Shown here piece after piece: positions 40,262 through 63,708 of a stretch of DNA of 64,000 nt. Positions within the stretch are counted from its first letter, which is position 1; each line of letters starts with the position of its first letter. Below the pieces are notes generated by a model, which worked only from the letters and a program-made list of their open reading frames with translations, ran no database searches and was not told the origin of the DNA. This DNA is from Phallusia mammillata (taxonomy: Eukaryota): the NCBI GenBank assembly GCA_965637545.1, contig OZ281494.1:9548001-9612000 (forward strand), given 5' to 3'. Position numbers and translations under genes: made by a program.

Positions 40262-42665
40262 TCACGCCTGGAAGATATGCAGAAGCAGAGCAACAAATGT
40301 TGCTAACATTGCTATTGGCAATGAATGAATTGAGTTAGATCCGTCGCCACAATCTTTGACAGTGGTGCCGTTAACCTCAACTTGTTCGCAGTCGTCATCA
40401 TCGTCAACCACAATATCTTCACCGTTATGATTGTTGCAGTAGTCACCTAACACGTAAAATCGACAAACTATGTTTGAATAGGGCAGAGTAAAAGTAAGAC
40501 AGAACCAAACATTTGTACGGTTAAGTGCAAGTTACTTATTTCGAGTTTGGTCGAAGCTATTATATTATCTTTACAACTGACATCACATCACTATATTTAC
40601 ATCTGACGTCACGTTATATATAATGAATCCAACCTTGGGGGTCGACTAAAAGTCCGACTGCCTGACTGGGCTGACTGACCTGACTTCGGCGGCAGTGTTT
40701 CACAAAATATTTTTGCAAATTTTGGCGATTGGGAAAGGCCTGACTTGGGTGATTGAGAATTGGGTTGGGGCTGGGGTTAGGATCAGGGTAGAAGTTTCAC
40801 CGAGAATATATTGTAAAAAACTGCCGCCGAAGTCATGCCAGTCAGGCAGTCAGGCAGTCAGGCTTTTAGTCAAACCCCCAACATTGTTCCAGATAACACA
40901 GATTAAGTAAGCGTAATTAAGCTATACCCTTAATTCATATTTTGTGTATTTTTGTCCCACCTAGCTGTAAAAACTAGAATATTTTTGAAGATTTAGAGTA
41001 TACTGTGTGACAGTTAGTCGCTGTCCCACTCTCATTCTGAAATAATATAAATTTCATGTTTACCATTGTGACAACTGTAGTGGCTCACAAGTCCAGAAAT
41101 CCCAAGAATAGTTCCATCGCCGCAGCCAAGATTCAATGGAATTCCACATGATCTGATTATTCCGACAGACTCTATTCCGAGAACACCTACAATAATTTTT
41201 AACTGCCTGTCAAACGATTTTTTTATTATTTACTTGCTTTTAATTTAGGAGAAGAAGTTTTCCAACGATATAATGCCAATGTGAAAATTGTTTTAATACC
41301 ACGCCCCACAGGTTTTGTGATAAGAAGTTGATTTTATGGTTCTTTAAATCGTTTAAAAAGGTCAAATTTTATTACAAAATTAAAGTCAAGCAAGCACTCT
41401 AAGTTGAAAGAGAATTGATGCAGAAGCAGTCATAAAATTGTCTATACTGTTTAATGTCTTCTCTTAACAGGACATGATCGAAACTTTTATTATTAAATGC
41501 AAATTAGGATGTTAATCCTGCAGTAAACTCGTTGGCTTCACCGTTTTATAGCTGCACGAGCACGTATCATGTTTTTTCTTCACTTTTACCCAAACTTTAA
41601 AAAGATATTTCTTGTAATTGTAACTTTTTTTACTTCTGCAAATTGTTTTATGTCTTGCGGTTGTTTTGAAGCAATGTTAACAGCGGTTGTTATTGTCAGG
41701 GATACGAAACGCGGCGATAGGTCTTTGTTACTGTTTCAGGCAAAATGGAACAGCTAATACTAATTTACATTTGTACACTCAAAAATAGTTTGCCGACAAG
41801 TGGTTTCAGTTCCAACAAGAAAAAAATAGAATGCATTTTGCAACTAATTATCCAAATCTTGCTCTGTCAATGAAAAGAGCTAAATAACGCAAAGAGTCTA
41901 AGCGTCAATCTTCGCTCCAAACAAAAGTAAGCTTTTGTGAAATGAAAGTGATACTGCTAGCAGAGTTAATTTCAAAATATCAAGGGAATTCGCTCCTCCG
42001 ACGGAAGTTCTTCATGTCAGTTACTATCTTAAAGATACCTTTTTGATAAGTTGGTTGCAACAAACGTTATAACAACGTTAGCATGCGGCCCGCCACAAAC
42101 ATTTTTTGCTACTCCGGCCCTTGACTCGTTTCAAGTTGTGCGGGCCTGTATTACATACAAAAGATCTCGTTTATTATTTCATGACAATTTCTTTAACTGC
42201 CTCGAAAAATTGACAAATTTAACACATAAATAGGTATGTGGTAGTTGTTTAAATATTTGTTTTAACACAAAGTTACAAGATTTTCAAATTTTTTGTTAAG
42301 GTTGCGTTTACTTAACACTTACTGGCTTTAATCACATCAGTTATGCAAGCTGAATATTCAGTCGGGCATTCGATTCTCCATTTTTCGTTCACATCTGGTC
42401 CTTCACATGAATCATCTAAGGCGACTCCAGCTACGGATGCATGTGTGCAATTGTAACACCGAATACTGATGCCTAAAAAACAATAAAAACAGATACCAAA
42501 GCGCATTGGCGTTATAATATCCCAAGAAACCAAATTGAAATAACACCCTTTAACAAAACAGTTTCGTTTTAGGATTAAGATCCAGTTTGAGTCGTTCGAA
42601 AAAAGTCTTTACTTACCCTTCGCCCAAAAAGCGGCAAACAATAATATGACAAGTTGAATTTTCAT
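40262..42665 (-). CDS. Ly6/uPAR (three-finger) GPI-anchored protein, copy A; exons 42665-42617, 42472-42323, 41186-41064, 40446-40262
   Basis: Signal peptide MKIQLVILLFAAFWAKG; IRCYNC...HYSCHNGDYCN; acidic stalk VDDDDDC; C-terminal GPI-type tail. All introns are phase 1, GT-AG. Confidence 0.85.
40637..40879. mobile_element. MITE with long (~80 bp) imperfect TIRs and a GGGTTAGG-like core, in Ly6-A intron 3
   Basis: GGGGGTCGACTAAAAG...GACTTCGGCGGCAGT pairs with ACTGCCGCCGAAGTC...CTTTTAGTCAAACCCCC. Flanks AACCTT / AACATT are a possible 6-bp TSD. Confidence 0.7.
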
Positions 42666-44206: not shown

Positions 44207-47200
44207 ATGATGGCAATTGCGTTCTTTGTTGTTTTTTCTTTATCCTCAATACATCACGGTAAGTGATAAGGAAAACATGCATTTATTCCTTTGAAACTAT
44301 AGGCAAAATCACACTTAAAAAGTATCATGTGACTGATTTTAAAAACACGTACAATTCCGTCTCATAATTTAGAGTAGATTTTTCGACAAGTTAACAGTTG
44401 TGTTGTCTCAAATTATACATGTTTGGTTAAAGATTAGTACCACTTTATACGTCATGGTGTGTTTTATGATTTTTTGACTCAAGCAATCGTGTCAACTTCA
44501 ACTGCCAACTTCAAAGAACAAAAAAAAGACAATGAAATTTCGGGCCAAGTATTCAATTTACTATTATACTCCCAATAATTTTTGAAATATCACAGTGCGG
44601 GGATCCCCTGGAAGAGCAAACTGTCGCGCTGAAGATGGTTTCTTCCGTTGTTTGTACACTGGCGTTTGCATTCCACGTTATAAAGTTCGAAGTTACGGAA
44701 GCGACTGTTGGTTGGGTTCGGTGTCAGATGAAAGCGACGAGGATAGAGGTCAGATCAAGTAAACATTTTACCTAGCGGCTTTAATTGTCTATTCATCACA
44801 ACAACGATAACACATAGGGCAGTATCTTACTTCAAAATGTTAAATTTCAGAACCTTTGAATTGCACCGATGATGAATTTCGATGCCGCTCTCTCCAAAAG
44901 TGTGTACCACGTTATCTTCTCAACACAAAGGAAAGTTGCAAATTAAACGAGGGCTTGATACTTCCATGCCGAAAGCAGACAGGTTGGTTGGTTTGTGGTT
45001 GCTAAACTATAACTTAAAATCTTTTTATATGTTGCCAAGCAACTAACGCTATAATCTCATCATAGAATTCACGTGCAAACGCAGCAAGTTGTGTATTCCA
45101 CGGTGGATGGTGAGGAACGGCAAGCGCGATTGCGACACAATGATAGTGGAGGACGGAAGTGACGAAACAATCACTCTCACCTCATGTGACGTTTCGGAAT
45201 TTCCCTGTTCAAACAACACTTCCTCACCACTACAGTGCATTCCGAGGGCATGGGTTGGAGACGGTGTGAAAGATTGTGCAAATGGAAGGGATGAAATTAC
45301 GAACTTGACAAGTTGTTACAATGACACAGAGTTTCGGTGTAACACAAACGGGCGCTGTTTGGCGCGACATCGAGTGATGAATGATTTTCCTGATTGTCCT
45401 GATGGTTCCGATGAAAAGCAAGCTCTTAAATGCATTCCAGACAAAGAGTTTCGATGCCATGACAACGGTCGTTGCATTCCGCGCTCGTGGCGAGGAAACA
45501 CATTTATGAATTGTAACGATGGAAGCGACGAAATTCCATGGAACGCCAACGAAACTTGCTTTGATGGCGAATTTCGTTGTCACAACGGCAAGCGATGTAT
45601 TCCCATCTACATGCTGTGTGATGGCATGGATCACTGCGGTGACTGCAGCGACGAGATTGAGAGCTGCACTGATCCCAGGATGCTTCGTTGTCCTAACGAG
45701 CCAGGTACGTGTGTGCTTCCCACCTATTCTTGCGATGAATTTGCAGACTGCCCAGGAAATGCCGAGGACGTCCTATATACCACTGGTTTTAAGTGTAACA
45801 AAGTTGTGGCCGGACTTGACCGTACAGTGTACTGCGTTCTGCCTCAATGGTCATTAACCGATGAATATCCGATTTGCAAAGATTCATCAGACTTGTGTTC
45901 TGTCAACGGAACTTTCAGATGCCATCGGTGTTTGTATTCGGACATGATTATTTCACCCAAACAGTTATGTGACGGTATTTTTGACTCCCCTGACCTAACA
46001 GACGAATGTCTTTGCGCCCGAAATGTTCCGGGTTCGGTTTCGTCAATATATCTGTGTGACAATGTGTGCTACGGAGATCCTGGCAACCCTGCTTGTTCGT
46101 TGTGCAGCATAGGGCAAGTAAAATGTGGATTGGAAGACGTATGTATTTCCAAATCACGAGTGTGCGATGGTAAAGTGGATTGTCCTATAACAAAGCTTGA
46201 TGAGCTTTACTGCGGCAGATCAACCAATCAGTACAACCCGGTGAACTCGAAAAATTTTCATTGCGACCCTATTCCACAAGAAATAAGTAAAGTTGTTCAA
46301 ACGCTCTTAACCAAGGATGTCATAAACACCTTAGCTCCTTTGCAAGCTACGAAGTAGGTGGCTTTTTTGTATTACAAGAGAAATATGCATGTTTCATTAA
46401 TGGAGTTTGTTTGCTTTGCTTCAGGTGTAACAATGTTGTGGAGTGTTCAAGATTCGAAGACGAGTGCAGCGAGAGAGCAAATTGCAGTATGAGACATCCA
46501 GTGTGCGACCAAATTCCGATGGGCATGGTAATGTTTTGACTTAAGGGATAATTTCATCCTTCACACTTCCTGTAGTGTGTTCTATTGAAAGACTTTGATT
46601 TGGTTCAAAACGGTACCTAAGTTATAGTTATATGCTGCTTACAATTGTGTTTTGTTGAAACCATGTGTAATACGCAATTTTTTTAGTGGGTTATCTCTGG
46701 ACACTTAGTCGGTGGAGATTTACTTCGAGTGCCAGCACGAATTTGTCAACTACAATTTGGCACCAGTTCCATCCTAGGCTCATCAATTTGCAACGGATTT
46801 GATGAGTGTCAGAAAGGCTACGACGAAGCGACATGTCCAGGTCGCTTTCGATGCGCAGCAGGACAAGTCGAAACCTTGGTGTTTGGTGAGATTTTGTTTA
46901 TCATTCAGACCTGAAAGAGGCTGTAATTGCTTTTAGGATATTAGGCAATGACTTTAATTATTCGTACAAAAGTTGTAGGTCAGGTCGCACTTTTCGGCTC
47001 AGATTCGGGCATTTTTTAACAAACGGGCTTGGTTTGGAACTGACTTCACATTCTGTGTCAGCATTTTCCAATGAAATTACTGAGGTAAATAGCTTAATTG
47101 GACTTAAACCTAATGCTTAACAGAACTAAAACGCCTTGTTTAAGCCATTGCCCATCATTTTACATTGTATATGTGTACTTCATTATTTTCAGTATATACG

Positions 47201-48835
47201 TACTTTTTGTAAGCTTTCAAATATTGGCCTGCCAATCAGTTTTTCAGGCGTCTCGAAAAATAACTTTGGTTTGGGCCGGATTTGGGATAGAATTTCCAGG
47301 TCCAGTGAAACTCTGTTGTATACAATTTCCCCAATCAATCTTTATTGATGGGTCATACTAAAGTCGACTTACTTCGTTCAGGTGTTCGTGATCGTGTAAG
47401 CATTCCAGTCCAGAAAACATGCGACCTGGTCTCCGATTGCATCAACTCCACAGACGAACTTAACTGTTCCGAATCCACACACTTCTACTGCCTTAACAAG
47501 TCACCTCCATTTGTACCAAGAACCAAAGTTCTCGATGGCGTTTCAGACTGCAGCGATTCCTCAGACGAATGTCCTCCGAACTACTTCAAAAACGACGCAC
47601 TTGCCTCAAACGAGCAAATGATCAAAATCCGAACCCTCGAGATCCTGGTTTGGTTTATGGCCGTATTGGCGTTGTTTGGCAACCTTGCAGTAATGGTGAA
47701 CACAGCGGTTTACTTCAAACAAATCAAAATCAATCAATTGCAAAACAAAGTAGGCTTAATCAACAACGCAATGATTTTCAACTTAGCAACAGCTGATCTT
47801 CTCATGGGTATTGTTCTCCTGGTTGTTGGAATCAAGGCAGTAGAGTTTTCAGGGAGTTACTGTCTTTTTGACAAGTTGTGGAGATCTAGTAACTTGTGCA
47901 ACGCAATTGGTGCCATGACAGTGATTTCCAGTGAGACATCAGTGCTTACATTAGTTTGTATCACATCATATCGTCTCTACATTATCTGTAAACCGTTTGA
48001 AACTCGTTGTATCAGGGGCAGAATTGCAATAATGTGGATCTGTATCATTTGGTTTGTCTCCTTTCTTCTTGCTTTGCTTCCACTTTCTACCGTCTTGTCT
48101 GGAAATATGTTAAACAGCGCTCAAATCACGCCTAGTCCTTATTTCTATTCTGATCAAGTGAAACTTACCGACTTCAGGCAATTTGCTCTGCGAATCGCTG
48201 CTTTAGGCAACAAAACTCAGCAAAATATTGAGTCATACAATTGGGACGAACTTAACGCTTATCTAACCTCGGAACAAAGCTCCGTGGCGCCATCCACTGT
48301 CGGTTATTTTGGTTACTACAGCAGCAGTAGCGTTTGCATTCCGCGTCTGTTTCGCATCAGCAAAAACGAATCAGGCGTCAACCCAATGTCGTCCATTGTA
48401 ATCTCGTTCAACTTTGTGGCACTTCTTTACATTGCTTCGTCTTATGTTGCCATTTACATCAAATCGAGTGGCAATGAGGTGACTAAATCCAACAAGGTGA
48501 AGAACAAACAGAATGTGAGCATGCAACGGAAAATCACATTGCTCATAGCAACTGACATGTGCTGCTGGTTACCGATTTGCATCATGACATTTCTTAGTAT
48601 GTCAGGAGTTGTTCTGCCTCCGGCTTCCTATGCAGTTTCAGCAGTGGTTCTCCTGCCCATCAACAGCTCACTCAACCCGATGATTTACAATAACTTTCCA
48701 CAGATGGTCTATTCCAAAATCCGATTTCTTATCAACAAAGCCAGAAGTTGCTTCAATTCTTCGCCATTGCGCAACGCCGTGCATCGGCCATCAGCCGAGC
48801 TTGAAATGCCCAACAAAAATGTCACTAAAGTGTAA
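44207..48835 (+). CDS. Class A GPCR with ~15 LDLa-like repeats and no LRRs, copy A; exons 44207-44258, 44596-44748, 44851-44982, 45066-46353, 46425-46527, 46687-46885, 47382-48835
   Basis: Signal peptide; repeated C..EFRC..GxCIP..xDG..DC.DGSDE modules; 7TM with LALFGN, NLATADLLMG, TDMCCWLPI, LPINSSLNPMIY, similar to LGR/RXFP/GRL101 7TM regions. Junction phases checked by hand. Confidence 0.85.
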
Positions 48836-49578
48836 CCTACAAATTTTTTAACGTAAATTGGCCATAACACCACGAAAGGCAGGTTACTCTTTAGGACTAA
48901 ATTTAGATAGTTGTAGTCTATTAATTATATACGTGGACTACCTTTTGTCTGACGTTTCTGTAAATCAAACCCTTGGGCTGTCAGATGTCAGTAATGCCCT
49001 AAAATTTATAACTTTATGTGAATAAGTGAAACTTTCACCAAGTAAAGCTGTATACGAGTCCCCGCCACTTGACGCTTGTGCAACGATATAGCTAAAGCGT
49101 GCCCTTTTGCTTTTCATCTTTTGCTCATCTGTGCCTTTTTGCTTTTTGCGCTCCTTGCCGTTTAACATTACGCAGCTTTTACCCGCTTGGGTAAATGCTA
49201 TAGCGCGACTGTGCTGCTACGATTTGTTCTACGAGCAAACGAAACTCAAATCAAGCACGTCCTTGAAGGAGTAGAGTGTTAAAAACATGATTTGCAGACA
49301 CAAACTGTTGCTGTTGTGTGTTTTTGTACAGACTGCATGATGTTGCTTACAAGTATGACATGTTTCGTTTGAAACTGAACTTGTTGACTTATTCCAATAG
49401 CGTATTCAAGAATTATGCTTTAATATTTTTACTGAAAAAAATTGTTGTTTGAACATTACTGCCATTTGTCACTTCTTTCAATTACATTGTCGTTTTGCCT
49501 GGACGCAGCGACAAGTTCATTATTTCCGCAACTCTCTCGATGTTAATGTGTTTACTCATTTTCGCAACAGAAAAATTT

Positions 49579-49778
49579 NNNNNNNNNNNNNNNNNNNNNN
49601 NNNNNNNNNNNNNNNNNNNNNNNNNNNNNNNNNNNNNNNNNNNNNNNNNNNNNNNNNNNNNNNNNNNNNNNNNNNNNNNNNNNNNNNNNNNNNNNNNNNN
49701 NNNNNNNNNNNNNNNNNNNNNNNNNNNNNNNNNNNNNNNNNNNNNNNNNNNNNNNNNNNNNNNNNNNNNNNNNNNNNN
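49579..49778. other. Assembly gap (200 N)
   Basis: Run of N. The flanks show it falls inside a tandem duplication, so the true gap is probably several kb. Confidence 1.
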
Positions 49779-51223
49779 CGTGTGAGCATTCCAGTCCAGA
49801 AAACATGCGACTTGATCTCAGATTGCGTCAATTCAACAGACGAACTAAACTGTTCTGAATCCACACACTTCTACTGCCTTAACAAGTCACCTCCATATGT
49901 ACCAAGAACCAAAGTTCTCGATGGCGTTTCGGACTGTAGCGATTCCTCAAGCGAATGTCCTCCAAACTACTTGAAAAACGACGCACTTGCCTCCAACGAG
50001 CAAATGATCAAAATTCGAGCACTTGAGATCCTGGTGTGGTTTATGGCCGTATTGGCGTTGTTTGGCAACCTCGCAGTTATGATAAACACTGCGCTTTACT
50101 TCAAAGAAATCAAATTCAATCAATTGCAAAACAAAGTAGGATTGATCAACAACACAATGATTTTCAACTTAGCAATAGCTGATCTTCTCATGGGTATTGT
50201 TCTTCTGGTTGTTGGAATCAAGGCGGTCGAGTTTTCAGGGAGTTACTGTCTTTTTGACAAATTGTGGAGATCTAGTAACCTGTGCAACGCAATCGGTGCC
50301 ATGACAGTGATTTCAAGTGAGACATCAGTGCTTACATTGCGGTTTGCATCACATCATATCGTCTCTACATCATTTATAAACCTTTCGAAACTCGTTGTAT
50401 CAGGGGCAGAATTGCAATAATGTGGATCTGTATCATCTGGTTTGTCTCATTTCTTCTTGCTTTGCTCCCATTTTCTACCGTCTTGTCTGGAAATATGTTG
50501 ACCAGCGCTCAAATCACACCCAGTCCTTATTTCTATTCTGATCAAGTGAAACTTACCGACTTCCGGCAATTTGCTCTGCGAATCGCTGCTTTGGGCAACA
50601 AAACTCAGCAAAAAATTGAGTCATACAATTGGGACGACCTTAACGCCTATCTAACTTTGGAACAAAGCTCCGTGGCGCCATCTACTGTCGGTTATTTTGG
50701 TTACTACAGCAGCAGCAGCGTATGCATTCCACGTTTGTTTCGCATTAGCAAAAACGAATCCGGCGTCAATCCGATGTCGTCCATTGTAATCTCGTTCAAC
50801 TTTGTGGCACTTCTTTACATCGCCTCGTCTTATGTTGGCATTTACATCAAATCGAGTGGCAACGAGGTGACTAAATCCAACAAGGTGAAGAACAAACAGA
50901 ATGTGAGCATGCAACGGAAAATCACATTGCTCATAGCAACTGACATGTGCTGCTGGTTACCAATTTGCATCATGACATTTCTTAGTATGTCAGGAGTTGT
51001 TCTGCCTCCGGATTCCTATGCAGTTTCGGCAGTGGTTCTCCTGCCCATTAACAGCTCACTCAACCCGATGATTTACAATAACTTTCCACAGATGGTCTAT
51101 TCCAAAATCCGATTTCTTATCAACAAAGCCAGAAGTTGCTTCAATTCCTCGCCATTGCGCAACGCCGTGCATCGGCCATCAGCCGAGCTTGAAATGCCCA
51201 AGAAAAATGTCACTAAAGTGTAA
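49779..51223 (+). pseudogene. LDLa-GPCR copy B, last exon only visible, with a 2-nt insertion frameshift at ~50340
   Basis: Highly similar to 47398-48835. Copy A CTTACATTAGTTTGT corresponds to copy B CTTACATTGCGGTTTGC, which splits the ORF (49449 and 50420 ORFs). The 5' exons presumably lie in the gap. Confidence 0.7.
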
Positions 51224-53446: not shown

Positions 53447-54000
53447 AGTAGTATATATTGTGGCTTTGACCCACCAAGTATGCTCAATTACTTCCGGTCT
53501 AACCCTATAGACGGTTAGACGTCAACCCTAAGTTTAGACCCTTAGTTTAGACGCTAACCCCAACTATAACCCTAACCCTAACGGTAATAACCCTGAGTTT
53601 AGACCCTAACCCTAACTATAACCCTAGTTAAGACCCTAGGTTTAAATGCTAACCCTAGGTTTAGACGGTAATCATTCTAAGTTTAGACTCTGACCCAAAG
53701 TTTAGGAGCTAACCCTAACCCCAACCCTAGTTAAGACCCTAGGTTTAAATGCTAACCCTAACCCTAACCCTAGGTTTAGACGGTAATCATTCTAAGTTTA
53801 GACTCTGACCCAAAGTTTAGGAGCTTCAATCCTAAGGGTAATAACCCTACGTTTAGACGTTAATTTGAGATGCTAATAATTCTAACTATAACCCTTTAGA
53901 GGGTAATGAATGTAATCCTATGGATGATTTTCCTAACTATTTGGTATGTATTAGGTATAACCCTAGGTAGTTTGTTGCCCAGATTGATATAACCCTAAAC
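53447..54000. repeat. Presumed left terminal inverted repeat with degenerate telomere-like (CCCTAA/AACCCT) repeats and an internal ~90-bp duplication
   Basis: Many AACCCT/CCCTAA/TTTAGAC units. 53620-53710 is repeated at ~53725-53826. The right TIR is not in the window, so TIR status is inferred. Confidence 0.7.
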
Positions 54001-54376
54001 GGTAAAAACCGCAAGATTGCATTATCTTTACGTTTGTGGTGAGCTGGCCTCGCTTGCGGAAATTGTTTCCTGAATTGCATTGCTATTGAGGGCAATTGGA
54101 TGGGAACAATTGTACGCTAGGCAATCGTGTTTACCAGGCCCATCAAAGGGCTTGGCGAAGCCAATAATTCGCGCCTGCAGACCTGTTTTCTGACGTAATA
54201 TTGCAAAGACGGTTTTGACGCAGTCAATTGCCAAGCGCTTCGGGGAGAATTTATTCATCGAATAACGTTTGTACAACCAAGTCATTTGCTATATAATTGG
54301 ACGAAAAAGAGTTTACAAAGTCATGCGAAAAAATTGCGATATGTACATGTTGTTGAAAACACAAATGATTGTTTGC

Positions 54377-57300
54377 TCAAAGTTCATTGGGCGCGGTTGA
54401 AATTCCGTCGCCTTGAACAATGCGCTTTCCGTAGAAGTAGGTTAAACCCGACTTGTATTGATTGTACGTATAAATTTCAGAGCGCTTAACCATAAAACCA
54501 ACATTTTTAGTTGTGTGCGATATTTGGGATCTTAAAACATTGAAATAGTTCTCTTTTCTCATTTCATTTTGTCTTCGATTCACCCCTTTGCAAGAAAATT
54601 TTTGACTCGAGTCGCCGAATGCAAAATACGTTTTTGAACACAATGCAACAATGCCATGGCCTTGGAATTCAACTTTCCACAACCCCCCTGACCTACGATC
54701 GTGAGCATATTGTTTTAGACAACAAGGCAGAAGATCCCAGGGAAAGCCCCCTTTCTTTGCTTTCAGGAAGTCATTGAAATGAGCAGGGCAGTACTGGCGC
54801 AAAAACCATTCTCCATACTCGTGGTAAAATTCAGTTAGCATGTGAGCTTTAACACAACTGTCTAAATTATTGCTAGATAAACTAACGTAACACGAGTCCG
54901 TGTCTATTAATACAATTTGATATTTGTTACGTTCAAGGTATTTATCTAGCATGTCATAAACAAATGCCAACAATCTTTGCTTTGCGTAACAAAAGATAAA
55001 AAGCCGATTTGGGAAGGGTAATTGAATTTGCACACAGCCTTTCGGCTTACCACCTGATATAGTCCATTCCCTAAACAATTGATGCTGCTAAAACGACGAT
55101 TGGCCACACACATTGCCGCTTTTGGGGCGTCCACATATTTTATGTTTTTGTGTTTTTCGACGTTCGTTATGGTCCGTCCAAATGCCGAGTTTGTTTGCAG
55201 TTTAGCCAACGTCCCTAAAATCGTGTAGTTCGGAGATGTATCTCCAAGCCTTCTGTCATTTGCTATTTTTTCACCAAAGCCTTCGAAGCAAGCAACAGGT
55301 TTAAATTCGATGAATTGATGAATTTTGTCTACAGTCAAGCCGTGCGTCATGTAAAATTTCACGAGAGGTGAAGTGAGAAATATTTTTGTCCCATGGAAAC
55401 TGCTGATTAACATTCGTCTCGGTTTTTTCAAAATGTTGTGTTTTTCCGCGTATGCTTTCATATGCGGTCCAATGTCATCTCGGCCCACATTTGTATTTTT
55501 GAATATTGGCGGAAACTGAGCGAGCTTGGTTTTCAAATGTTCAGGAGTAGAGATGTCACACTCGACCAAACCAAAAAGTCGATCGTTTTTTATATCAGCG
55601 ATTATTTCGCCTTCCGACATTTTGCCTTTGGTGTTATGAAAAAGATTCAGTTTGTTGAGAAAGTGTTTGACCTGGAAGTCGTTTCTTTTCTGATGTTTCC
55701 AAGCGCATTCCGCCATTTCAATCACCGTGTAACCGAGCGACCGAAGGTAATTGGTGGTTTGTTGAGTGTCTTGTCGTAATTGCCACATGGTCTTCTTCAA
55801 CTTTTTGTTGTAAGTGTCATCTTTGAAATATTTACAACAGCCATGGTAAAAACACCCTGTAGTTCAAGTTCAAAGTGTTAACGATTTCATTTTATAGTTT
55901 GTAAATCACCAAACAAGCAAATTATTTTTTAACTAACAAGGCAAAGCAAACTAAGTTTTAATCTCTGTATTATATAAGAGCAATACCAGGTTTGTTTTGT
56001 TGTTTTTTTCAACAAAGTTTATTTTATATTTCACTACATTTTATTCTAAAATAATGCATTTGGGAAAACACAAAGTTTAGTGAACATGTATAGGACCACC
56101 GTTCGCGCTTGCAACATTGCGGAAATTGTTGGCCTAATTGTATTACCAGAGCCCCATAGCGTGGACAATTTGTTGGAAAACTACCAGCTCGCTTTGTGAC
56201 GTAAACGCTTGCAACACCAAACTTGTAAAGTAAGTTTTTGTTTAATAAAAGCGTTAAACTTGGCACGAAAACGCACCGATCTTTGGATGTTTCCTTGTCC
56301 AAACGAAAAGGAAGTCATTTCTCATTGAACTTTGCAAGTAAATGACTATTTTTATAGTTCAAGGAAACAATTCGCTTACAACATCAAACTAGCATAGTGC
56401 TTTTTTTATGTTTCTTTTTGTTCAATAAATGGATAAAATTTGGCAGGAAAACATCGTTGGATATTTCTATATTTCTACATGTTTTTTCTATATTTCATGG
56501 GAAAAGGAAGTAATTGAAGTTCTGTGGGGGGCCCACATTTTGCTTGCAATTTATAACTCACCGTGAAATTGGTATACATTCCCCGATGACGTATACCCAT
56601 CTACACGAACTCGTTTTGAACCCAAAACAGCTTCTTTGGAGTTGAACTGATGGTAAATCGTCTGACCTGAGCGATGAGATTCCCATTCCAAAAATTCGAC
56701 AGCAATTTGACTGTGATAGTTTCTGAACTCTGGTTTAAACTGGTTATTACGTAGTCGACGAATTCCAAAACCGGTAGGCATTTCCATCATCAGACACTGA
56801 AAAGATTAAACACAAAACATGAGATCGAATTTGGGTCGAATGAAAACAACCCCATATCGATACTTACTTTAGTGTACAAGCTATTTGCGTCGTATCCAAT
56901 CACGGATTGACAAGGTAGTTTTCCATTTTCAAGAGCGCGGATGATTGTGATGCCTCTTTCACAATACCGAGAATGGATTATCGCAGGACCTCCCACAACC
57001 TGATGTCTTATTAGTTCAACCAAGTCCTTGTTTTTTTCACCAAAAAGCATAAAAACTTCCCCGTGTTTTAAATTCCGATACATGATTTTTGCCGTTAGAC
57101 CAGGGATCGATACGGCTTCTTTGAACATGTCGCAATTCTGGGATTTGTACAAATCAAACTGTTTTTGCAACGCTTCCAGAAAGGGTAATACATCCAGCGT
57201 ATTATAATACTCCAAGTAGTCTCGAAGAGATGTCATTCCCTTTTCTTTCCAAACCTAATACAAACACTGTTCTTTAGAAAATTAAAAACAAAATAATTTA

Positions 57301-59406
57301 CATGTTTTTGAAAAACAACTCACGTTTAGGCACTTCTTGTAAGCCTCTTCGGAAATATTGCTTCCTTTAATGTGACTGTAGAATTCTTTATGTGGAGGTA
57401 ATTCTCTTTCCTGGAGACGTTCCAGCGTCGTTATGTATTCATACGGAAACGAAGCTTTCATTTGAGTGCAATCGTAGGCTTTCAAATATTGTTCGTACGA
57501 CGTGCCCGCTGCCAGATAATAGCTGATGTCTAGAAACCGCAGTGACTCTGTACTCAAACACATAAAGCTTTGATCCTTTTTAACAACGCTAATTCTTTGA
57601 CCTTGTTGTTGCAAAGACATGATCAAATACGGTTTGATAAGATTCATATCAAATCGGCCGCCGTTGAAAGTAAAAAAATAATTGCATGAGATGTGTTTCT
57701 AGTTCCCGTCTAATCTGGTACAAGGGCAATTGCTTTACTTCAACAGACTCCTTTAAACTCTGGGCTTGTAAGAGGTCATCAACTTGTTCCAGTAAGCTTT
57801 TATATTTTGGTTGTAGAAGATTGTACGCTTGGTTTGACATTGCAAGCAGGCGATTCGTTAATTTGTCAATCAACCCTTGAGAATTTCCATCCGTCACTTG
57901 AAAATAGGCGTTTTCAAAGCCTGGTATGTTGGAACTTACGCAAAACGACAGCGGTTTGTGTCGTTGCGTGTATTCCGTTTGGATGGTTTTGGACGGCAGA
58001 TTTTCTGAATCCAAATAGCTCTCAAAATCAAAAACGGCGCGAAATTCGTAGAAACGATCTACAACGCTCACATCAATTCCTGCAAATTCCATTTTTTCAA
58101 ACACAGTTTTTGAACATTGATAGGAGCCAGCGGGATACACTTTTTTGACGCTGTTTGTGCATTTTTTCTCATGTCGATTTAATTCATAAAAATTCTTGAA
58201 GTTCGTGCCACAAGACTTGCATGCAAATGAATTGGAAAATTGGTTGAAGTTTCGAATCAGACTAAAATGATTTTCGTACAGATTTAAATTGCAGGTGGGA
58301 TAGGTTTGTTTCATCAACAAAGACGGTGAGCGTTGCACGAGTCTGGAAACCACTTCTCCGTTGAATTTCTTCAGTTCAAAAACCGAAATGTTGATTTTAA
58401 ACAACTGTTCCAAAGCGTAAATATCACAGAGTTGAACACCGGCGAAATCGCCCACTCTTTCACGAGACCAGCGTGAATACAAGTCTATCATTTCCCAGTT
58501 AACTTGCCTGTCCTGAAACCAAAGCTGAAGGCATCGGAAAAAACATAAATTGTCTTTGTGCAAACGACCATGGCTGTTCCGCAGCATACACACGATTGAT
58601 TTGTTGCGGCGGATGTAAGGCGGCAGTTCCGTTACTCGTCCACCAATCAACTGACGTCCACACTTGTAAACATAATATATAATGTTTGTAATAATTTCGA
58701 CGGTGTTTTTGGTGTCAGGTCGTTGCAGTTTTCCGATTTCCAGCAGATCCAACTCTCTGACCATGGCAATAAATCGCTCGACATCCTCGGGGGTATTGAT
58801 TGGAATCGGCTCGTCAATTGCAGGTGTTGCCGAATTAGAATGATAGTAACGTAGTTGTGCAGTTTCTTGATGACGCAGAATGGCACCAACGCTTAAAGAA
58901 ATTTTTGCGCGGTATGGTATTAATTCTAATAAATACTTTCGCAATTGTTCCAAATGATCAAAGTCGTCAAATGTGAAATTAAAACTATCAACTACCGGCT
59001 GCCCTATGTGATGCATTGTTCTAATGGAATCCCAGTGTCTAGAATAAAACTCTTGTAATTCTTCATCTAAGAATATAGGAGCTTCGTCCGTTCCGGCTAT
59101 AATCCGCGGTTGGTCAAAATCTGTTGCAAAAGAATTCTGTTGCGGACGTGACGATATCGGGTGATTTTCGGAAACATGATGCTCCAAATCGTTTAACCGT
59201 GGAAACGAACTATCACAGTATTGACAGCTGTATTTTGGCTGACCGCGACAGGACGTTTTATGACGTTGGACATCGCGCGGGTATCTGAATACTCCATTAC
59301 AATATTCACATGTTGCATGAGCTCTTGCTTCGTGCAGTAGCAAATGAGAGTTTAACAATGCTTCAGTCCGGAAAATCCGAAAGCAATTAGGGCAGCTATA
59401 AGACAT
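54377..59406 (-). CDS. Protein-primed family B DNA polymerase, spliced: exons 59406-57324, 57254-56868, 56796-56562, 55856-54377 (~1394 aa after correcting two 1-nt homopolymer frameshifts)
   Basis: ExoI VFDFES, ExoII FNGGRFD, ExoIII YNTLDV, motif A GYDANSLY, motif B KLQTNSAFG, motif C IDTDS, then SKTY and CKGV. Vsr-like insert VDGY..YQFHGCFYHGC..LGYTVIEMAEC. Three N-terminal C2H2/C2HC-like fingers. AATAAA at 54255-54250. Confidence 0.9.
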
Positions 59407-59549
59407 TGCCTATCGACCTAAATGAAATACAAAATAGGTATGAAATAAATGCATCATATATTGGATGCAGAATACAAGTGTTACATTGTTATACACGTGA
59501 TTATAAGATTACAAGCAATACACATTTGATTGGATGTGAAATGAACACA

Positions 59550-60116
59550 TCAATTGGCTTTGGAGAAAGTCTTTCCCACTTGATTCACTAATTTCAACAC
59601 GGCGTTTTCAGTAGCTTCTTTCCTCTGACAAAAGTCGACCATGAGTTGTTCATCTTCTGAATCTTCTAACCCTGGTGCATTCGCAGCTTGATTTGTTGCC
59701 TCGGCATTGAGCCCACTTGTTCCTGCACTAAGATCATCTTCTTGATTGTAATACGACTCTCCTAAAAGATGTTCGAGGTAGCGCCTCTCAATCTGTCTGA
59801 CTGGTCTGTAAACATGCCTGGTAGGTTTTTCCTTGGTTCTGCATGAGATTAATGTCGCAGGTCGGCGAGAACGGATAAACGGATTCCCTTCGTCGCTATC
59901 TAAATCATACTTTTCCATAAGTCGTTTGCTTTTTGGAGAGAATTCCAACTTTCTCTTGGCTTCAGTCATTTTTTCTTTATCAATTTGGTTTTTGCGTAAT
60001 GTTCTCTTCTTTCGCTCTTTGCGTATTACCTTTTGGTTTTTTTTTAGTTTAGACAATTGTTTCGGACTGTCGCCACTATCACTAATCACTATCGCCTTTG
60101 TTTTGCGGCGCCGCAA
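59550..60116 (-). CDS. Polinton accessory ORF, Lys/Arg-rich then acidic; start unresolved
   Basis: 188-codon open frame with NLS-like basic clusters. It begins at TTG, and the upstream frame is broken by a TAA. No homology recognised. Confidence 0.4.
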   Translation of the reverse strand: MRRRKTKAIVISDSGDSPKQLSKLKKNQKVIRKERKKRTLRKNQIDKEKMTEAKRKLEFSPKSKRLMEKYDLDSDEGNPFIRSRRPATLISCRTKEKPTRHVYRPVRQIERRYLEHLLGESYYNQEDDLSAGTSGLNAEATNQAANAPGLEDSEDEQLMVDFCQRKEATENAVLKLVNQVGKTFSKAN

Positions 60117-60497
60117 ACTTTTGTTCAGCGGTTAAAAATCTTCGTCTGAGTTAAGAATAATATCATTGCTTGCAAGATTCTTTGCCATGATGCTTTTACT
60201 GGGTACAGATTGCACTGAACCGTGGGGATCACTTAAAGGCATGGCATGGGAAAAAATCCACAGCGGCTGGAAACGACGAGAGAGCCTTGCAATTTGCGAC
60301 ATCGTGGTGCAATTGTTTAGGGTTGTTTGAATTGGTCAATTCAGTTTTAATTGCGCAATACATACGTCACTGTATTGCGCCACATGTCGGGACTTGCCTG
60401 CCGAAACCAAAAAACAAACAAAACACGTGTGGTTTTGCGGCAATGCTTAAAAAGGGAGAGGTTTTCATGTCGACCCCGAACATTAAATTGCAACAGC

Positions 60498-61009
60498 ATG
60501 CATCGTCAAGTTCGTTCGGGGAAAACTATTTTCGCTGAAATCACTCGTCGACATGTAGTGGAAGGTAAATGCTTTGTGCTTACCCCGAGGATTGTCAGGG
60601 GAGTGACTGATTGTTTTTTGCAGATACCCGCTTACGCTGTGCAACGCTGAGTGTGCGTTTGGGAAAAGGATTGTACCTCGACTGCGACCAACTGAAACAA
60701 CTCGTAACCTACCTGTTCGAAGGTCTACCATATCTTCTGGCATTTCCGAAATCGGCAAACAACGGCTATTTCCGTGTGCAAATAATTTACTGTTCGGATC
60801 CAAATTCTCAAATCCAGGCCCGTGTTGATGAAATAACGACCGAATCTAAATTAATGAATGCGGAAGTGCTTTTCAAAGAAAACATTCTGTTTGCCCCGGT
60901 GTCATACTTGAAACCTGTTATTTCCAATACATCATGTTATGAATCTCACGCAATCGATTCAAGGGAAATCAAAAATGTAGAAAAACTGTTTCGAGAATCG
61001 CGCCTATAA
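60498..61009 (+). CDS. Polinton ORF of unknown function, two exons (60498-60564, 60624-61009), ~150 aa
   Basis: A 59-nt intron GAAG|GTAAAT...GACTGATTGTTTTTTGCAG|AT (phase 1, branch-like CTGAT) joins MHRQVRSGKTIFAEITRRHVVE to DTRLRCATL... in frame. Confidence 0.55.
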
Positions 61010-61066
61010 AATGGCGATCTAGCTATTTCTTCTTTCATTTTGTGTTCGCTTTGAAAGGATTTTGAC

Positions 61067-61678
61067 ATGTGTGCTCAATTTAAACATCCTTCAACCATTG
61101 TGATATCGGGTCCTAGTCAATCAGGGAAAAGCGTATTCGCATTTAAACTGATACAAAATATAAAACAAGTATTTGATCCCGTTCCGAAAAACATTTATTG
61201 GTTTTACGGTGAATTTCAAGATTCGTTTCGCAATTTTCCCGATGTACAGTTTAAAGAAGGATTAAATGAATTAAATTATCTCAAACAAGATTCTTTGTGT
61301 GTTATCGACGATTTGATGACAGAGTGCAATGAAAAAATCTCTAATCTATTTACCAGGGGATCGCATCATAGAAAGTTGACAGTTGTTTACCTGATTCAAA
61401 ACCTTTTCCACAAGGGCCGCGAGCATAGAACCACATCGTTAAACGCTCATTATATTGTTTTATTTAAAAATCCACGGGATAGTTCTCAAATACAAGTTCT
61501 AGCTCGGCAAATGTATCCGGGCAATACAAAGGCCCTAATCGAAGCGTTTCGCGAATCAACAGGAATTCCTCATGGATATCTATTACTAGACTTGCGTCAA
61601 GAGACACCGGAAAACTTGCGGTTACGCACCGGAGCGTTTCGGGACGAAACCCATTACGTTTACATTCCAAAGACTTAA
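61067..61678 (+). CDS. A32/FtsK-HerA-type DNA packaging ATPase
   Basis: Walker A GPSQSGKS, Walker B CVIDD, then RGSHHRKLTVVYLIQN...SLNAHYIVLFKNPRD, typical of Polinton ATPases. Confidence 0.9.
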   Translation: MCAQFKHPSTIVISGPSQSGKSVFAFKLIQNIKQVFDPVPKNIYWFYGEFQDSFRNFPDVQFKEGLNELNYLKQDSLCVIDDLMTECNEKISNLFTRGSHHRKLTVVYLIQNLFHKGREHRTTSLNAHYIVLFKNPRDSSQIQVLARQMYPGNTKALIEAFRESTGIPHGYLLLDLRQETPENLRLRTGAFRDETHYVYIPKT

Positions 61679-61715
61679 ATTCGAATGCATTTGCGTTTGT
61701 GCGTCATTTTACAGC

Positions 61716-62066
61716 ATGCCGTCGACCTTGATACAAAAACATAAGCAGGCTTTGCAAGCTCTGGCGAAAGGCGACGCAAGAGTTCGTCATTTAATTTTAA
61801 ACGGCTGTGACAAGACTCTGGTGAACTGTTTGAGCGAGTGCGCAGACAATATCCTGCGAGGAAACGTACCGCTAAGTTCCGTTGAAAAGAAACGATTGAA
61901 ACCCTATCGTCAAAAACTTCGTTGTCTCGCCAAAAAACAAACCCCCTTTCTCAAAAAGAAGAAATTGATTAACCAAAAAGGAGGCTTCCTTTCTGCAATT
62001 CTTGTGCCATTATTAGGAAGTGTTTTGCCGAGTCTGGTTGGAGGCATAAGCAAGTTGTTTAAGTGA
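61716..62066 (+). CDS. Small basic Polinton virion-type protein ending QKGG|FLSAILVPLLGS (amphipathic tail)
   Basis: 116 aa. The pattern ECAxNILRGNVPL...KKLRxLA...QKGGFL is recurrent in Polinton/adintovirus small ORFs. The GG|F site resembles an adenain cleavage motif (inference). Confidence 0.7.
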   Translation: MPSTLIQKHKQALQALAKGDARVRHLILNGCDKTLVNCLSECADNILRGNVPLSSVEKKRLKPYRQKLRCLAKKQTPFLKKKKLINQKGGFLSAILVPLLGSVLPSLVGGISKLFK

Positions 62067-62677
62067 TGTCCGTGCAAAAAATGATGCTCATTGACCCACG
62101 CATGTACCGCGATTCGACCACAAAAGTACTATCACGACTTGATGCTGACATGGAACAGATTTTAAATCGGAACGATTTGACGGATCAAGAAAAAATCTCG
62201 CAATACCAGGAAGTGTTGGAAAAGTATTTGCTGTTTCACCAGAAACTCGAGAAGCCCCTGGCACTCCCTATCGTACGCAACCCCGCACCTGCAATTCAAA
62301 ACAAAGCGCTGAAAACGGACAATCTCGCCGAGCAAACAACTCACTCTATAGCAAAGCCATTCGATGACGCAGCGGAAATGATTGTAACAAGCGCGCCCAA
62401 AGCTCTGCAGAAAAAGGCTCGATCACTATTAGATCACTTAAAGCAGAACAACATAAATTGGGACGCGCACAAACAACTGATCTACAATGATCAAGTGATC
62501 ACCGGAAGCAATATCGTCTTGGTTCAAGACGCTCTTCGTAAGCGTAAGAATGTAGATCCAATCGGTTGGAAAACATTTGCTGAAATCCTGAAAGAAACCA
62601 ACACACCCGAATATATCGTCGGAAACAAAGACCGCTTCAATTTTACCAAAACGAATCCAAGTTGGAAAACCTATTAA
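62066..62677 (+). CDS. Conserved Polinton accessory protein of unknown function
   Basis: 203 aa from the ATG. The motif INW...LIYNDQVITGSNIV..LVQDALRKRK...PIGWKTF..IL..N.P..IVGN is seen in Polinton ORFs upstream of integrase. The ATG overlaps the previous stop (TGATG). Confidence 0.7.
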   Translation: MSVQKMMLIDPRMYRDSTTKVLSRLDADMEQILNRNDLTDQEKISQYQEVLEKYLLFHQKLEKPLALPIVRNPAPAIQNKALKTDNLAEQTTHSIAKPFDDAAEMIVTSAPKALQKKARSLLDHLKQNNINWDAHKQLIYNDQVITGSNIVLVQDALRKRKNVDPIGWKTFAEILKETNTPEYIVGNKDRFNFTKTNPSWKTY

Positions 62678-63708
62678 TGGAAAAGATATACTACACACCC
62701 TCTCAGGCGGGGAGTTTGGGCGGCGTTGATGCCTTGCATCGCTACAGCAAACAAAACCGATCCGATGTGAAACAATGGCTTTCAGGAAGCAGGGCTTATA
62801 CCTTGCACAGAACTGCGCGACGTCACTTTCCTCGCAGAAAAGTGGTTGTAGGGGGAATGGGCCAACTCTTTCAAGCCGATCTAATCGATATGAAGCGATT
62901 GGCTCGTTTCAACGATAATGTAAAATTTCTGTTGACCAACATTGATGTTTTTTCAAAGGTGGCGTATGTCATTCCTTTGCGCAATAAAACTTCTAGCTCC
63001 GTGGTGAAAGGCTTTTCCAGCATCCTTGAACAAACAAAGCCTTGCAAACTTCAAACAGACCTTGGCAGTGAATTCATATCAAAACCATTTCAAGCTTTGT
63101 TAAAAAAGCACGGCATTGGTTTTTACAGTACTTTTAACGCCGAGACAAAGGCTTCTGTGGTCGAACGTTTTAATCGCACAATTAAAAGCAAGCTATTTCG
63201 ATACATGACCGCGCAAAACACCCATCGCTATATTGATGTACTTGACGACCTTGTTCACTCCTATAATACATCCTATCATCGTGCAATCGGGCGAGCTCCA
63301 TTGGAAGTAAGTGACTGCAATCAGGAAATTGTCTTCCAGAAACTCTATGGCCATCCTGAACCTTTGACCCGACAACGATTTAAACCGGGTGATGCTGTTA
63401 GAATTTCTAAGTTCAAAAAGGTTTTTGGAAAAGGGTACGTTTCGCAGTGGAGCGAAGAATATTTTCATGTAAAACAGCGGCAGCCCGGCGAACCTCCAAC
63501 TTACACGCTATCAGATCTAAACGGGGAACTCTTGCAGGGGACGTTTTACGAAGCGGAACTGCAAAAAATAACTCCGCCGGAAACATTTCAAATTGAAAAA
63601 ATAATAAAGCGAAGAAGAAATAAATTATACGTTAAATGGAAAGATTATTCGCATGATTTCGATAGTTGGATCCCGGCGTCAAGCGTTCAACATGCCAGTG
63701 GTCACTAA
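62677..63708 (+). CDS. Retroviral-like (c-int) integrase with C-terminal chromodomain
   Basis: FQADLIDM, LTNIDVFSK, LQTDLGSEF, ASVVERFNRTIK (DDE core); C-terminal FQIEKIIKRR..KLYVKWKDYSHDFDSWI chromodomain. The ATG overlaps the previous stop (TAATG). Confidence 0.92.
   Translation: MEKIYYTPSQAGSLGGVDALHRYSKQNRSDVKQWLSGSRAYTLHRTARRHFPRRKVVVGGMGQLFQADLIDMKRLARFNDNVKFLLTNIDVFSKVAYVIPLRNKTSSSVVKGFSSILEQTKPCKLQTDLGSEFISKPFQALLKKHGIGFYSTFNAETKASVVERFNRTIKSKLFRYMTAQNTHRYIDVLDDLVHSYNTSYHRAIGRAPLEVSDCNQEIVFQKLYGHPEPLTRQRFKPGDAVRISKFKKVFGKGYVSQWSEEYFHVKQRQPGEPPTYTLSDLNGELLQGTFYEAELQKITPPETFQIEKIIKRRRNKLYVKWKDYSHDFDSWIPASSVQHASGH

What the first reader, a model, noticed from the sequence alone, without database searches (positions are those of the whole stretch)
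59407..61716. Polinton start codons sit directly behind 3' splice acceptors: possible SL trans-spliced operon or adenovirus-like spliced leader
Seen: four element genes have an acceptor-like AG, three of them with a clear pyrimidine-rich tract, 1-11 nt before the ATG. These are TTGCAACAG|C-ATG (60498), TTTCATTTTGTGTTCGCTTTGAAAG|GATTTTGAC-ATG (61067), GCGTCATTTTACAG|C-ATG (61716) and, on the minus strand, TTTTGTATTTCATTTAG|GTCGATAGGCA-ATG (PolB, 59406). Intergenic gaps are only 37-57 nt on the right arm, with no evident matching donors. Host GPCR genes here show the same pattern (CTGAAAG|A-ATG at 44207). Established: ascidians use spliced-leader trans-splicing and operons; adenoviruses splice one leader to many acceptors. 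Inference: the virus-like element may express its gene cassette as a polycistronic pre-mRNA resolved by the host SL machinery. I am not aware of this being described for Polintons.
Basis: partly seen in the sequence, partly recalled or inferred. Interest (0 to 1): 0.75.

Follow-up and report, generated by a model that had tools for sequence, protein, structure and literature searches.

The report
Ascidian Polinton: AG-before-ATG near chance
The splice-acceptor-like AGs just before four start codons of this virus-like element in a sea-squirt genome are really there, but they are about as frequent as chance predicts, so the idea that the element borrows the host's spliced-leader machinery stays plausible and untested.

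Summary
All four quoted AG..ATG motifs are at the stated coordinates, and the 57- and 37-nt gaps are correct. The element is a Polinton/Maverick-type replication and integration module: protein-primed PolB with N-terminal zinc fingers, A32-type ATPase, rve+chromo integrase and four orphan ORFs. Its genes form two divergent same-strand clusters. The host is an ascidian: a Nova-like host gene is 66-68% identical to Ciona and Clavelina. So the premise about trans-splicing and operons holds. The signal itself is weak. An AG 1-11 nt upstream occurs at 46% of all 2214 ATGs in the window (genes 5/7, P=0.17). With a host-calibrated rule (YAG plus pyrimidines) P is 0.05-0.13. Acceptor-like sites are as dense inside coding sequence as in the gaps. 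Two starts overlap the preceding stop by 1 nt, and one of these has no nearby AG. One start (60498) is ambiguous. The ATPase "tract" holds a canonical TATA(-32)/initiator pair, found at 0.3% of ATGs. Only two sites (before ORF116 and PolB) look like real host acceptors. No leader donor was found for an adenovirus-like cis-leader. Verdict: an ordinary compact Polinton. The SL-operon reading is not excluded (about 0.25) and needs RNA evidence.

The parts
54377..59406 (-). Protein-primed family-B DNA polymerase gene with N-terminal C2H2 zinc fingers. It is not one open frame in this copy.
   Evidence: C2H2 hits at residues 3-25. 3143 homologues, with full-length ones of 1344-1487 aa. Relatives reach PF03175 DNA_pol_B_2 and share the zinc fingers. 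tblastn to five intact relatives gives 4-5 pieces, 2-3 frame changes, 2-3 internal stops and about 900 nt extra. Whether the interruptions are introns or decay was not decided.
54250..54255 (-). The only canonical AATAAA after any gene of the element, about 120 nt after the polymerase stop.
59418..59434 (-). Acceptor-like TTTTGTATTTCATTTAG, 11 nt before the polymerase ATG. It is one of the two sites that resemble real host acceptors.
   Evidence: 12/15 pyrimidines, YAG
59550..60302 (-). Orphan minus-strand gene (about 250 codons, basic/acidic low complexity) upstream of the polymerase. It has one internal stop and no AG within 15 nt of its ATG.
   Evidence: no Pfam or PHROG hit
60303..60497 (.). 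195-nt divergent region between the two clusters. It holds a perfect 10-bp palindrome at 60353..60380, and AATTGCAnCAnn directly before both flanking ATGs.
   Evidence: no donor-like site on the plus strand and one weak one on the minus strand
60498..61009 (+). Orphan gene read in two frames. The frame switch coincides with a 59-nt stretch that has a strong GT donor and a T-rich AG acceptor (candidate intron). The start is ambiguous (alternative in-frame ATG at 60384). The AG before 60498 has a poor pyrimidine tract (7/15).
   Evidence: exons searched apart and not joined
61005..61011 (+). TATAAAA overlapping the stop codon of the upstream gene, 32 nt before an initiator-like TCATTTT (A at 61037).
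   Evidence: this arrangement occurs at 7 of 2210 ATGs (0.3%). A Ciona TATA at -31 is functional in CiTnI (PMC3074122).
61033..61057 (+). It contains the initiator-like motif, and the AG is a non-YAG AAG.
61067..61678 (+). Intact A32/IVa2-type (FtsK-HerA) packaging ATPase, 203 aa.
   Evidence: 1147 homologues, best 53% identity over 100% of the length, 204-206 aa, with PF04665 and PF02456 precomputed
61701..61715 (+). Acceptor-like GCGTCATTTTACAG|C, 1 nt before the ORF116 ATG. It is the best host-like site and closely resembles a host acceptor, GCTTTTACAG|G.
61716..62066 (+). ORF116, an orphan with a hydrophobic C-terminus.
   Evidence: no family hit
62066..62677 (+). ORF203, an orphan. Its ATG overlaps the previous stop (TGATG).
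   Evidence: no homologues; low-confidence fold, pLDDT 43
62677..63708 (+). Retroviral-type integrase (rve core plus C-terminal chromodomain). Its ATG overlaps the previous stop (TAATG), and there is no AG within 14 nt.
   Evidence: PF00665 and PF00385; transposase PHROGs; foamy-virus and HTLV integrase chains

Best explanation
This is the replication and integration half of a Polinton/Maverick-type virus-like element resident in an ascidian genome. Its genes are packed as in such elements generally: two divergent same-strand clusters around a 195-nt control region. The minus cluster holds an orphan gene and PolB. The plus cluster holds an orphan gene, the ATPase, ORF116, ORF203 and the integrase.

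The AGs before the start codons are mostly what T-rich leaders give by chance in 59% A+T DNA. At least the ATPase gene appears to have its own TATA/initiator core promoter inside the 57-nt gap. Two sites, before ORF116 and before PolB, are good host-like 3' splice sites and could receive the host spliced leader if a transcript runs through them.

Shown: the gene identities, the architecture, the host lineage and the background frequencies. Inferred: gene-proximal promoters, and the lack of any special adaptation.
For: Background frequencies of AG-before-ATG: 46%, 15% and 5-18% by rule, against 5/7, 3/7 and 2-3/7 genes. Acceptor-like sites occur every 135-170 nt in the coding sense strand, and the gaps hold the number expected from their length. 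A TATA(-32)/YYANWYY pair lies 30 nt before the ATPase ATG, an arrangement found at 0.3% of ATGs. The same spacing is a functional Ciona promoter (PMC3074122), and Ciona promoters are T-rich around the TSS (PMC4691747). The AG before the ATPase is AAG, whereas all 7 host acceptors read here are YAG. The minus-strand orphan gene and the integrase have no AG within 11 nt of the ATG, and ORF203 has only a weak AAG. The 12-nt context shared by the two first genes has AG in one and CG in the other. Gene identities.
Against: Seven genes give little statistical power. With the strictest rule, 2/7 reaches P=0.045. The architecture meets the operational Ciona operon criterion, and the internal junctions lack AATAAA while the terminal gene has one. 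Every proposed AG lies downstream of all uATGs in its leader. TTCAT lies at branch-point distance (20-29 nt) before three AGs. No TATA/initiator pair was found for any gene other than the ATPase. Relatives of this virus lineage (adomaviruses, adenoviruses) do use acceptors immediately upstream of ATGs (bioRxiv 10.1101/341131). One gene seems to carry a 59-nt spliceosomal intron, so the transcripts do meet the spliceosome.
Confidence: 0.5

Rival explanations
1. Each cluster is transcribed from the central divergent region as one polycistronic pre-mRNA. The host SL is trans-spliced at unpaired acceptors in front of downstream cistrons, at least ORF116 and PolB and perhaps the ATPase. This resolves the transcript into capped monocistronic or oligocistronic mRNAs and removes the uATGs. 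ORF116, ORF203 and the integrase, which overlap by 1 nt, would then share one mRNA or use acceptors inside upstream coding sequence.
For: The host is an ascidian. About 50% of Ciona genes are trans-spliced and about 20% lie in operons of up to 6-7 abutting, often single-exon genes that mostly lack AATAAA (PMC1488885, PMC2760879, PMC7986045). The gaps are -1, -1, 37 and 57 nt, with no donors and no AATAAA inside and one AATAAA after the last minus-strand gene. Two acceptors are indistinguishable from host ones. uATGs lie upstream of every AG. Transposon transcripts carry the SL in Hydra (bioRxiv 10.1101/2024.03.13.584568).
Against: There is no enrichment over background. The PolB junction is 143 nt, above the 100-nt criterion. 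A Ciona-type abutting cleavage at the AG before ORF203 would cut off the upstream stop codon, and the integrase has no nearby AG. The ATPase site is AAG and has its own TATA/initiator pair, which would leave only a 20-nt outron (outrons need more than about 50 nt, PMC3074122). Compact packing is the rule for Polintons in any host. This copy's polymerase and one orphan gene are interrupted. No RNA evidence is available.
Confidence: 0.25
2. An adenovirus- or adomavirus-like strategy. A short leader exon transcribed from the central region is cis-spliced alternatively to the acceptors in front of the individual ORFs.
For: In adomaviruses, acceptors immediately upstream of the late-ORF ATGs are heavily used together with a three-exon leader, as in the adenovirus tripartite leader (bioRxiv 10.1101/341131). 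One strong donor exists early in the plus cluster, inside the gene 60498..61009.
Against: No donor-like site (>=4/6 to the generic consensus) lies on the plus strand of the divergent region, and only one weak one lies on the minus strand. The one strong donor has its own good acceptor 59 nt away. In a trans-splicing host, an unpaired acceptor needs no cis leader. The acceptors are at chance frequency.
Confidence: 0.07
3. This copy is a silent, decaying insertion. Whatever signals its ancestor used, nothing is expressed here, and the motifs are relics or noise.
For: The polymerase is read in 4-5 pieces with frame changes and internal stops. The minus-strand orphan gene has one internal stop. 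No capsid or protease gene and no terminal inverted repeat lie inside the window.
Against: The ATPase, ORF116, ORF203 and the integrase are intact open frames. Some or all of the polymerase interruptions could be introns, since the neighbouring gene has a convincing 59-nt candidate and Ciona has a 60-bp intron class (PMC4122922). The right part of the element probably lies beyond 64000.
Confidence: 0.18

Closest known systems
Polinton/Maverick elements (adintovirus-type) of animals
   Same: Protein-primed PolB, retroviral-type integrase with chromodomain and A32/FtsK-type packaging ATPase, tightly packed with small orphan ORFs.
   Different: No protease, major or minor capsid gene, and no terminal inverted repeats, were seen within the window. 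The element runs to or past the window's end. The polymerase frame is interrupted.
Ciona-type SL-resolved operons (Satou et al. 2006, 2008)
   Same: Same-strand genes <100 bp apart (4 of 5 junctions), mostly single-exon, no AATAAA in upstream cistrons, ascidian host.
   Different: The defining evidence (SL on downstream cistrons, upstream poly(A) end abutting the AG) is RNA-level and absent here. Two junctions are stop/start overlaps, which do not fit an abutting AG. One junction is 143 nt.
Adenovirus major late unit and adomavirus late operon (spliced leader, acceptors just before ATGs)
   Same: A related virus lineage in which acceptors immediately upstream of start codons were shown by RNA-seq (bioRxiv 10.1101/341131). 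Gene blocks lie on one strand.
   Different: Those use a cis-spliced multi-exon leader with donors, and no leader donor was found here. Those are late structural genes, whereas here the visible genes are the replication and integration genes.
Hydra transposon transcripts carrying host spliced leaders
   Same: Mobile elements in a trans-splicing animal whose transcripts receive the host SL (about 30% of TE Iso-Seq reads; bioRxiv 10.1101/2024.03.13.584568).
   Different: Shown there for CR1 and Tc1-type elements as single transcripts. It was not shown for Maverick genes or as a way of resolving polycistronic units, and the host phylum differs.

Membership tests
Polinton/Maverick | Protein-primed family-B DNA polymerase | tested here: met
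   3143 homologues. Intact relatives reach PF03175 above the cut-off, and the region aligns over their full length. The window's own pieces do not reach Pfam by themselves.
Polinton/Maverick | Retroviral-type (rve) integrase | tested here: met
   PF00665 37 bits (cut-off 32.6) plus chromodomain; PDB integrase chains
Polinton/Maverick | A32/FtsK-type packaging ATPase | tested here: met
   Homologues carry PF04665/PF02456, with full-length matches
Polinton/Maverick | Double and single jelly-roll capsid genes and adenain-like protease | tested here: not met
   No ORF in 51200..64000 matches any such family. They may lie beyond the window's end, so for the whole element this is inconclusive.
Polinton/Maverick | Terminal inverted repeats with target-site duplication | tested here: inconclusive
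   No inverted pair flanks the genes inside the window. The right end is probably outside it.
Ascidian SL-resolved operon | Host performs SL trans-splicing | tested here: met
   Host lineage is ascidian by the Nova-like gene. Trans-splicing is taken from the literature on Ciona and Oikopleura and not shown for this species.
Ascidian SL-resolved operon | Same-strand neighbours <100 bp apart | tested here: met
   Gaps are 57, 37, -1 and -1 nt. The fifth junction (143 nt) fails.
Ascidian SL-resolved operon | Unpaired 3' splice site at the 5' end of each downstream cistron | tested here: inconclusive
   Host-like YAG sites lie before 2 of 5 downstream cistrons, an AAG before two and none before one. 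This is not above background.
Ascidian SL-resolved operon | SL sequence on mature mRNAs of downstream cistrons, with the upstream poly(A) end abutting the AG | not testable with these tools
   No transcript data are reachable.
Adenovirus/adomavirus-type cis-spliced leader unit | Leader exon with a splice donor upstream of the acceptors | tested here: not met
   No donor-like site on the plus strand of 60303..60497, and one weak one on the minus strand
Adenovirus/adomavirus-type cis-spliced leader unit | Acceptors immediately upstream of ORF start codons, used in RNA | tested here: inconclusive
   The motifs are present but at chance frequency. Their usage is not testable.

The most novel reading that the evidence does not exclude
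In ascidians, Polinton genes are expressed from two divergent polycistronic pre-mRNAs that the host's spliced-leader trans-splicing resolves, at least at the acceptors before ORF116 (61714|61715) and PolB (59418|59417). The virus-like element would thus have adopted the host's operon system in place of the cis-spliced leader used by its adenovirus and adomavirus relatives.
Probability: 0.22. Interest if true: 0.7.

Novelty: new member of a known kind. Interest (0 to 1): 0.33.

Why it matters
How animal Polintons are transcribed is essentially unknown. If an ascidian Polinton used host SL trans-splicing to resolve gene blocks, it would be the first case of a DNA virus-like element plugged into a metazoan operon system. 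It would also be a natural counterpart to the adenovirus and adomavirus spliced leader, and it would give a simple RNA-seq signature for finding active copies. As it stands, the sequence shows only an ordinary compact Polinton module. Its start-codon contexts do not differ measurably from background, so the value of the finding is a clearly posed hypothesis that is cheap to test, rather than a discovery.

Tried and rejected
- An exact look-up of a host ORF to name the species found nothing on record. The ATPase search also returned no self-hit, so the host genome does not seem to be in the protein collection.
- The Rfam scan of the window found no SL RNA or any other family.
- The search for terminal inverted repeats or a second copy of the element in the window found none.
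- The shared TCATTT/TTTCAT motif before three ATGs looked striking (P=0.0003 naive). A look-elsewhere simulation gives 13-20%, so I rejected it as evidence either for an initiator or for a branch point.
- The shared ACAGC-ATG-C string of two starts reaches P=0.045 in random sets and is not compelling.
- Acceptor-like sites are depleted on the element's sense strand (6.9 against 9.4 per kb). The BEL/Pao ORF shows the same and host exons do not, so this is uninformative.
- Strong donor-like sites are not enriched in the polymerase sense strand (3 seen, 2.5 expected). So I cannot say whether its interruptions are introns.
- ORF203 has no homologues. Its single-sequence AlphaFold model is poor (pLDDT 43), so I ran no fold search.
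- The polymerase piece has no PDB hit by sequence.
- Paper searches for Polinton or Maverick together with trans-splicing or spliced leader found no paper linking the two for Polinton genes.
Full report
OBSERVATION. All four quoted motifs are at the stated coordinates.
- CAACAG|C-ATG lies at 60498.
- TTTCATTTTGTGTTCGCTTTGAAAG|GATTTTGAC-ATG lies at 61067.
- GCGTCATTTTACAG|C-ATG lies at 61716.
- On the minus strand, TTTTGTATTTCATTTAG|GTCGATAGGCA-ATG lies at 59406.

The gaps of 57 and 37 nt are right and contain no GTRAG donor. The host example at 44207 is also there.

WHAT THE REGION IS. The genes form two divergent same-strand clusters around a 195-nt region (60303..60497).
- Leftwards: an orphan gene (59550..60302), then after 143 nt the polymerase (54377..59406).
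- Rightwards:
  - an orphan gene (60498..61009);
  - after 57 nt, an intact 203-aa A32/IVa2-type packaging ATPase (61067..61678);
  - after 37 nt, ORF116 (61716..62066);
  - ORF203 (62066..62677);
  - a retroviral-type integrase with chromodomain (62677..63708).

The last two genes each start by a 1-nt overlap with the preceding stop, TGATG and TAATG.

Gene identities rest on these results:
- The ATPase has 1147 homologues of the same length, aligned from residue 1, so its ATG is the true start.
- Pfam sees only C2H2 zinc fingers in the polymerase. An exhaustive search finds 3143 relatives. Intact ones (1344-1487 aa) reach PF03175 and share the N-terminal fingers.
- The integrase matches rve and Chromo in Pfam and integrase chains in the PDB.

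No capsid or protease gene and no terminal inverted repeats lie inside the window, and the element probably continues beyond 64000.

STATE OF THE COPY.
- The polymerase region aligns over the whole length of intact relatives. It does so in 4-5 pieces, with 2-3 frame changes, 2-3 internal stops and about 900 nt of extra sequence.
- The minus-strand orphan gene has one internal stop.
- The gene 60498..61009 is read in two frames. The best frame-compatible GT..AG stretch is 59 nt, with a 5/6 donor and an 11/15-pyrimidine acceptor, which fits the 60-bp intron class of Ciona (PMC4122922).
- I searched its two exons apart and left the joined step out.
- I could not decide whether the polymerase interruptions are introns or decay. 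Strong donors are not enriched there.

HOST. A Nova-like KH gene in the window (exons between 10616 and 21545, minus strand) has its best named relatives in Ciona savignyi and C. intestinalis (68%), Clavelina lepadiformis (66%) and Styela clava (51%). The host is therefore an ascidian nearer to Ciona and Clavelina, but none of these species. The literature gives the following for Ciona (PMC1488885, PMC2760879, PMC7986045):
- About half of the genes are SL trans-spliced.
- About a fifth lie in operons, defined operationally as same-strand pairs <100 bp apart.
- The upstream mRNA ends directly at the downstream AG.
- Operons mostly lack AATAAA and are rich in single-exon genes.

IS THE PATTERN MORE THAN CHANCE? 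No.
- Of all 2214 ATGs in the window (both strands), 46% have an AG 1-11 nt upstream. Of the seven element genes, five do (P=0.17).
- Requiring >=9/15 pyrimidines gives 15% background against 3/7 (P=0.08).
- Seven host cis-acceptors read from homology-supported exons are all YAG, with 7-12/15 pyrimidines. With that calibration (YAG, thresholds 7, 9 and 10) the backgrounds are 18%, 9% and 5%. The genes score 3/7, 2/7 and 2/7, giving P=0.12, 0.13 and 0.045.
- Host-like acceptor sites occur every 135-170 nt on the sense strand of both clusters. The gaps hold 1 and 2 of them, against 0.6 and 1.1 expected from length.
- Only the sites before ORF116 (TTTTACAG|C, almost the same as a host acceptor, GCTTTTACAG|G) and before PolB (TTTCATTTAG|G) look like real acceptors.
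- The ATPase site is an AAG. The 60498 site has a poor tract, and its ATG is not secure, because an in-frame ATG lies 114 nt upstream.

FOR THE SL-OPERON READING.
- Four of five junctions meet the <100-bp criterion.
- No internal junction has AATAAA or ATTAAA, whereas the last minus-strand gene has one about 120 nt after its stop. This is weak, since absence over such short stretches is expected.
- Each leader contains uATGs, and all of them lie upstream of the proposed AG. This matches the 'sanitising' role discussed for CiTnI (PMC3074122).
- TTCAT lies 20-29 nt before three of the AGs.
- One gene seems to have a spliceosomal intron.
- Relatives of this virus lineage use acceptors immediately upstream of ATGs (adomavirus RNA-seq, with a three-exon leader like the adenovirus one; bioRxiv 10.1101/341131).
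- In Hydra about 30% of transposon Iso-Seq reads carry the host SL (bioRxiv 10.1101/2024.03.13.584568).

AGAINST IT.
- The statistics above give no enrichment.
- The 57-nt gap before the ATPase contains TATAAAA (61005..61011, overlapping the upstream stop codon) exactly 32 nt before an initiator-like TCATTTT (A at 61037), 30 nt before the ATG. Only 7 of 2210 ATGs (0.3%) have such a pair. A TATA at -31 is a functional Ciona promoter element (PMC3074122). From that start the AAG would have only a 20-nt outron, below the roughly 50 nt thought necessary.
- The AG before ORF203 lies inside the upstream coding sequence, just before its stop, and the integrase has no AG within 14 nt. A Ciona-type abutting junction does not fit those two.
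- The PolB junction is 143 nt.
- The two first genes share AATTGCAnCAnn before their ATGs, but the AG of one is CG in the other.
- Compact packing is normal for such elements in any host (my own knowledge).

THE CIS-LEADER ALTERNATIVE. No donor-like site (>=4/6) lies on the plus strand of the divergent region, and only one weak one (GAC|GTATGT) lies on the minus strand. The one strong donor of the plus cluster has its own acceptor 59 nt away. This alternative is not supported.

MOST LIKELY MECHANISM. The most likely picture (about 0.5) is ordinary compact packing with gene-proximal control. The ATPase has its own TATA/initiator promoter. The AG-before-ATG pattern is largely a by-product of T-rich leaders. 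Two good acceptors may or may not be used. The SL-operon model keeps about 0.25, the cis-leader model about 0.07, and a silent decaying copy about 0.18. The last is not exclusive of the others as a statement about the ancestor.

Shown: coordinates, gene identities, host lineage, background frequencies, and the presence or absence of signals. Inferred: every statement about transcription.

NOVELTY. I found no paper linking Polinton or Maverick genes to SL trans-splicing. The nearest precedents are the Hydra transposon result and the adomavirus/adenovirus leader. The idea is new but unproven. What is demonstrably here is a new member of a known kind.

STEPS LEFT OUT, AND A SLIP.
This removes the comparative test and any chance of seeing SL-bearing transcript contigs.
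- I left the N run at 49579..49778 alone.
- Slip: in my private reasoning I worked out where one in-frame stop lies in the minus-strand orphan gene, went through the bounds of the polymerase ORF pieces as the ORF listing printed them, and worked out the bounds of the candidate intron.

Noticed in passing
window 53520..54000: A degenerate telomere-like (CCCTAA-rich) repeat array with a 115-nt higher-order unit. It lies just beyond the polymerase 3' end and its AATAAA. It could mark the element's terminus, its insertion site or an interstitial telomeric tract.
   Followed up: partly
window 60353..60380: A perfect 10-bp palindrome, GCGCAATACA-N8-TGTATTGCGC, in the centre of the divergent region (DNA fold z=-2.9). 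The loop contains ACGTCA. It is a candidate factor-binding site of a bidirectional promoter.
   Followed up: partly
window 60303..60314 and 60486..60497: Both first genes of the two divergent clusters have AATTGCAnCAnn directly before their ATG (9/12 identical). These form an imperfect inverted repeat bounding the control region.
   Followed up: partly
window 62064..62068 and 62675..62679: Stop/start overlaps TGATG and TAATG join ORF116, ORF203 and the integrase. This arrangement would suit coupled termination-reinitiation or a shared mRNA.
   Followed up: no
window 57649..59406 (-): The polymerase begins with C2H2 zinc fingers, and a further finger lies near residue 400. Intact relatives share this, so it is a trait of this Polinton lineage.
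   Followed up: partly
window 22664..28390 (-): A single 1908-aa open frame of a BEL/Pao LTR retrotransposon (DUF1759, RT, Peptidase_A17, integrase, DUF5641), apparently intact.
   Followed up: no
window 44207..51223 (+): A tandem run of LDLa-repeat and 7TM (rhodopsin-type) receptor genes. Two of the 7TM copies are near-identical paralogues, and the last copy holds the 200-N run and is read in two ORFs.
   Followed up: no
window 40637..40878: A palindromic element of about 240 bp (arms 88% complementary), MITE-like.
   Followed up: no
window 10616..21545 (-): A host Nova-like KH-domain gene with at least five exons. It was used here to place the host among the ascidians.
   Followed up: yes
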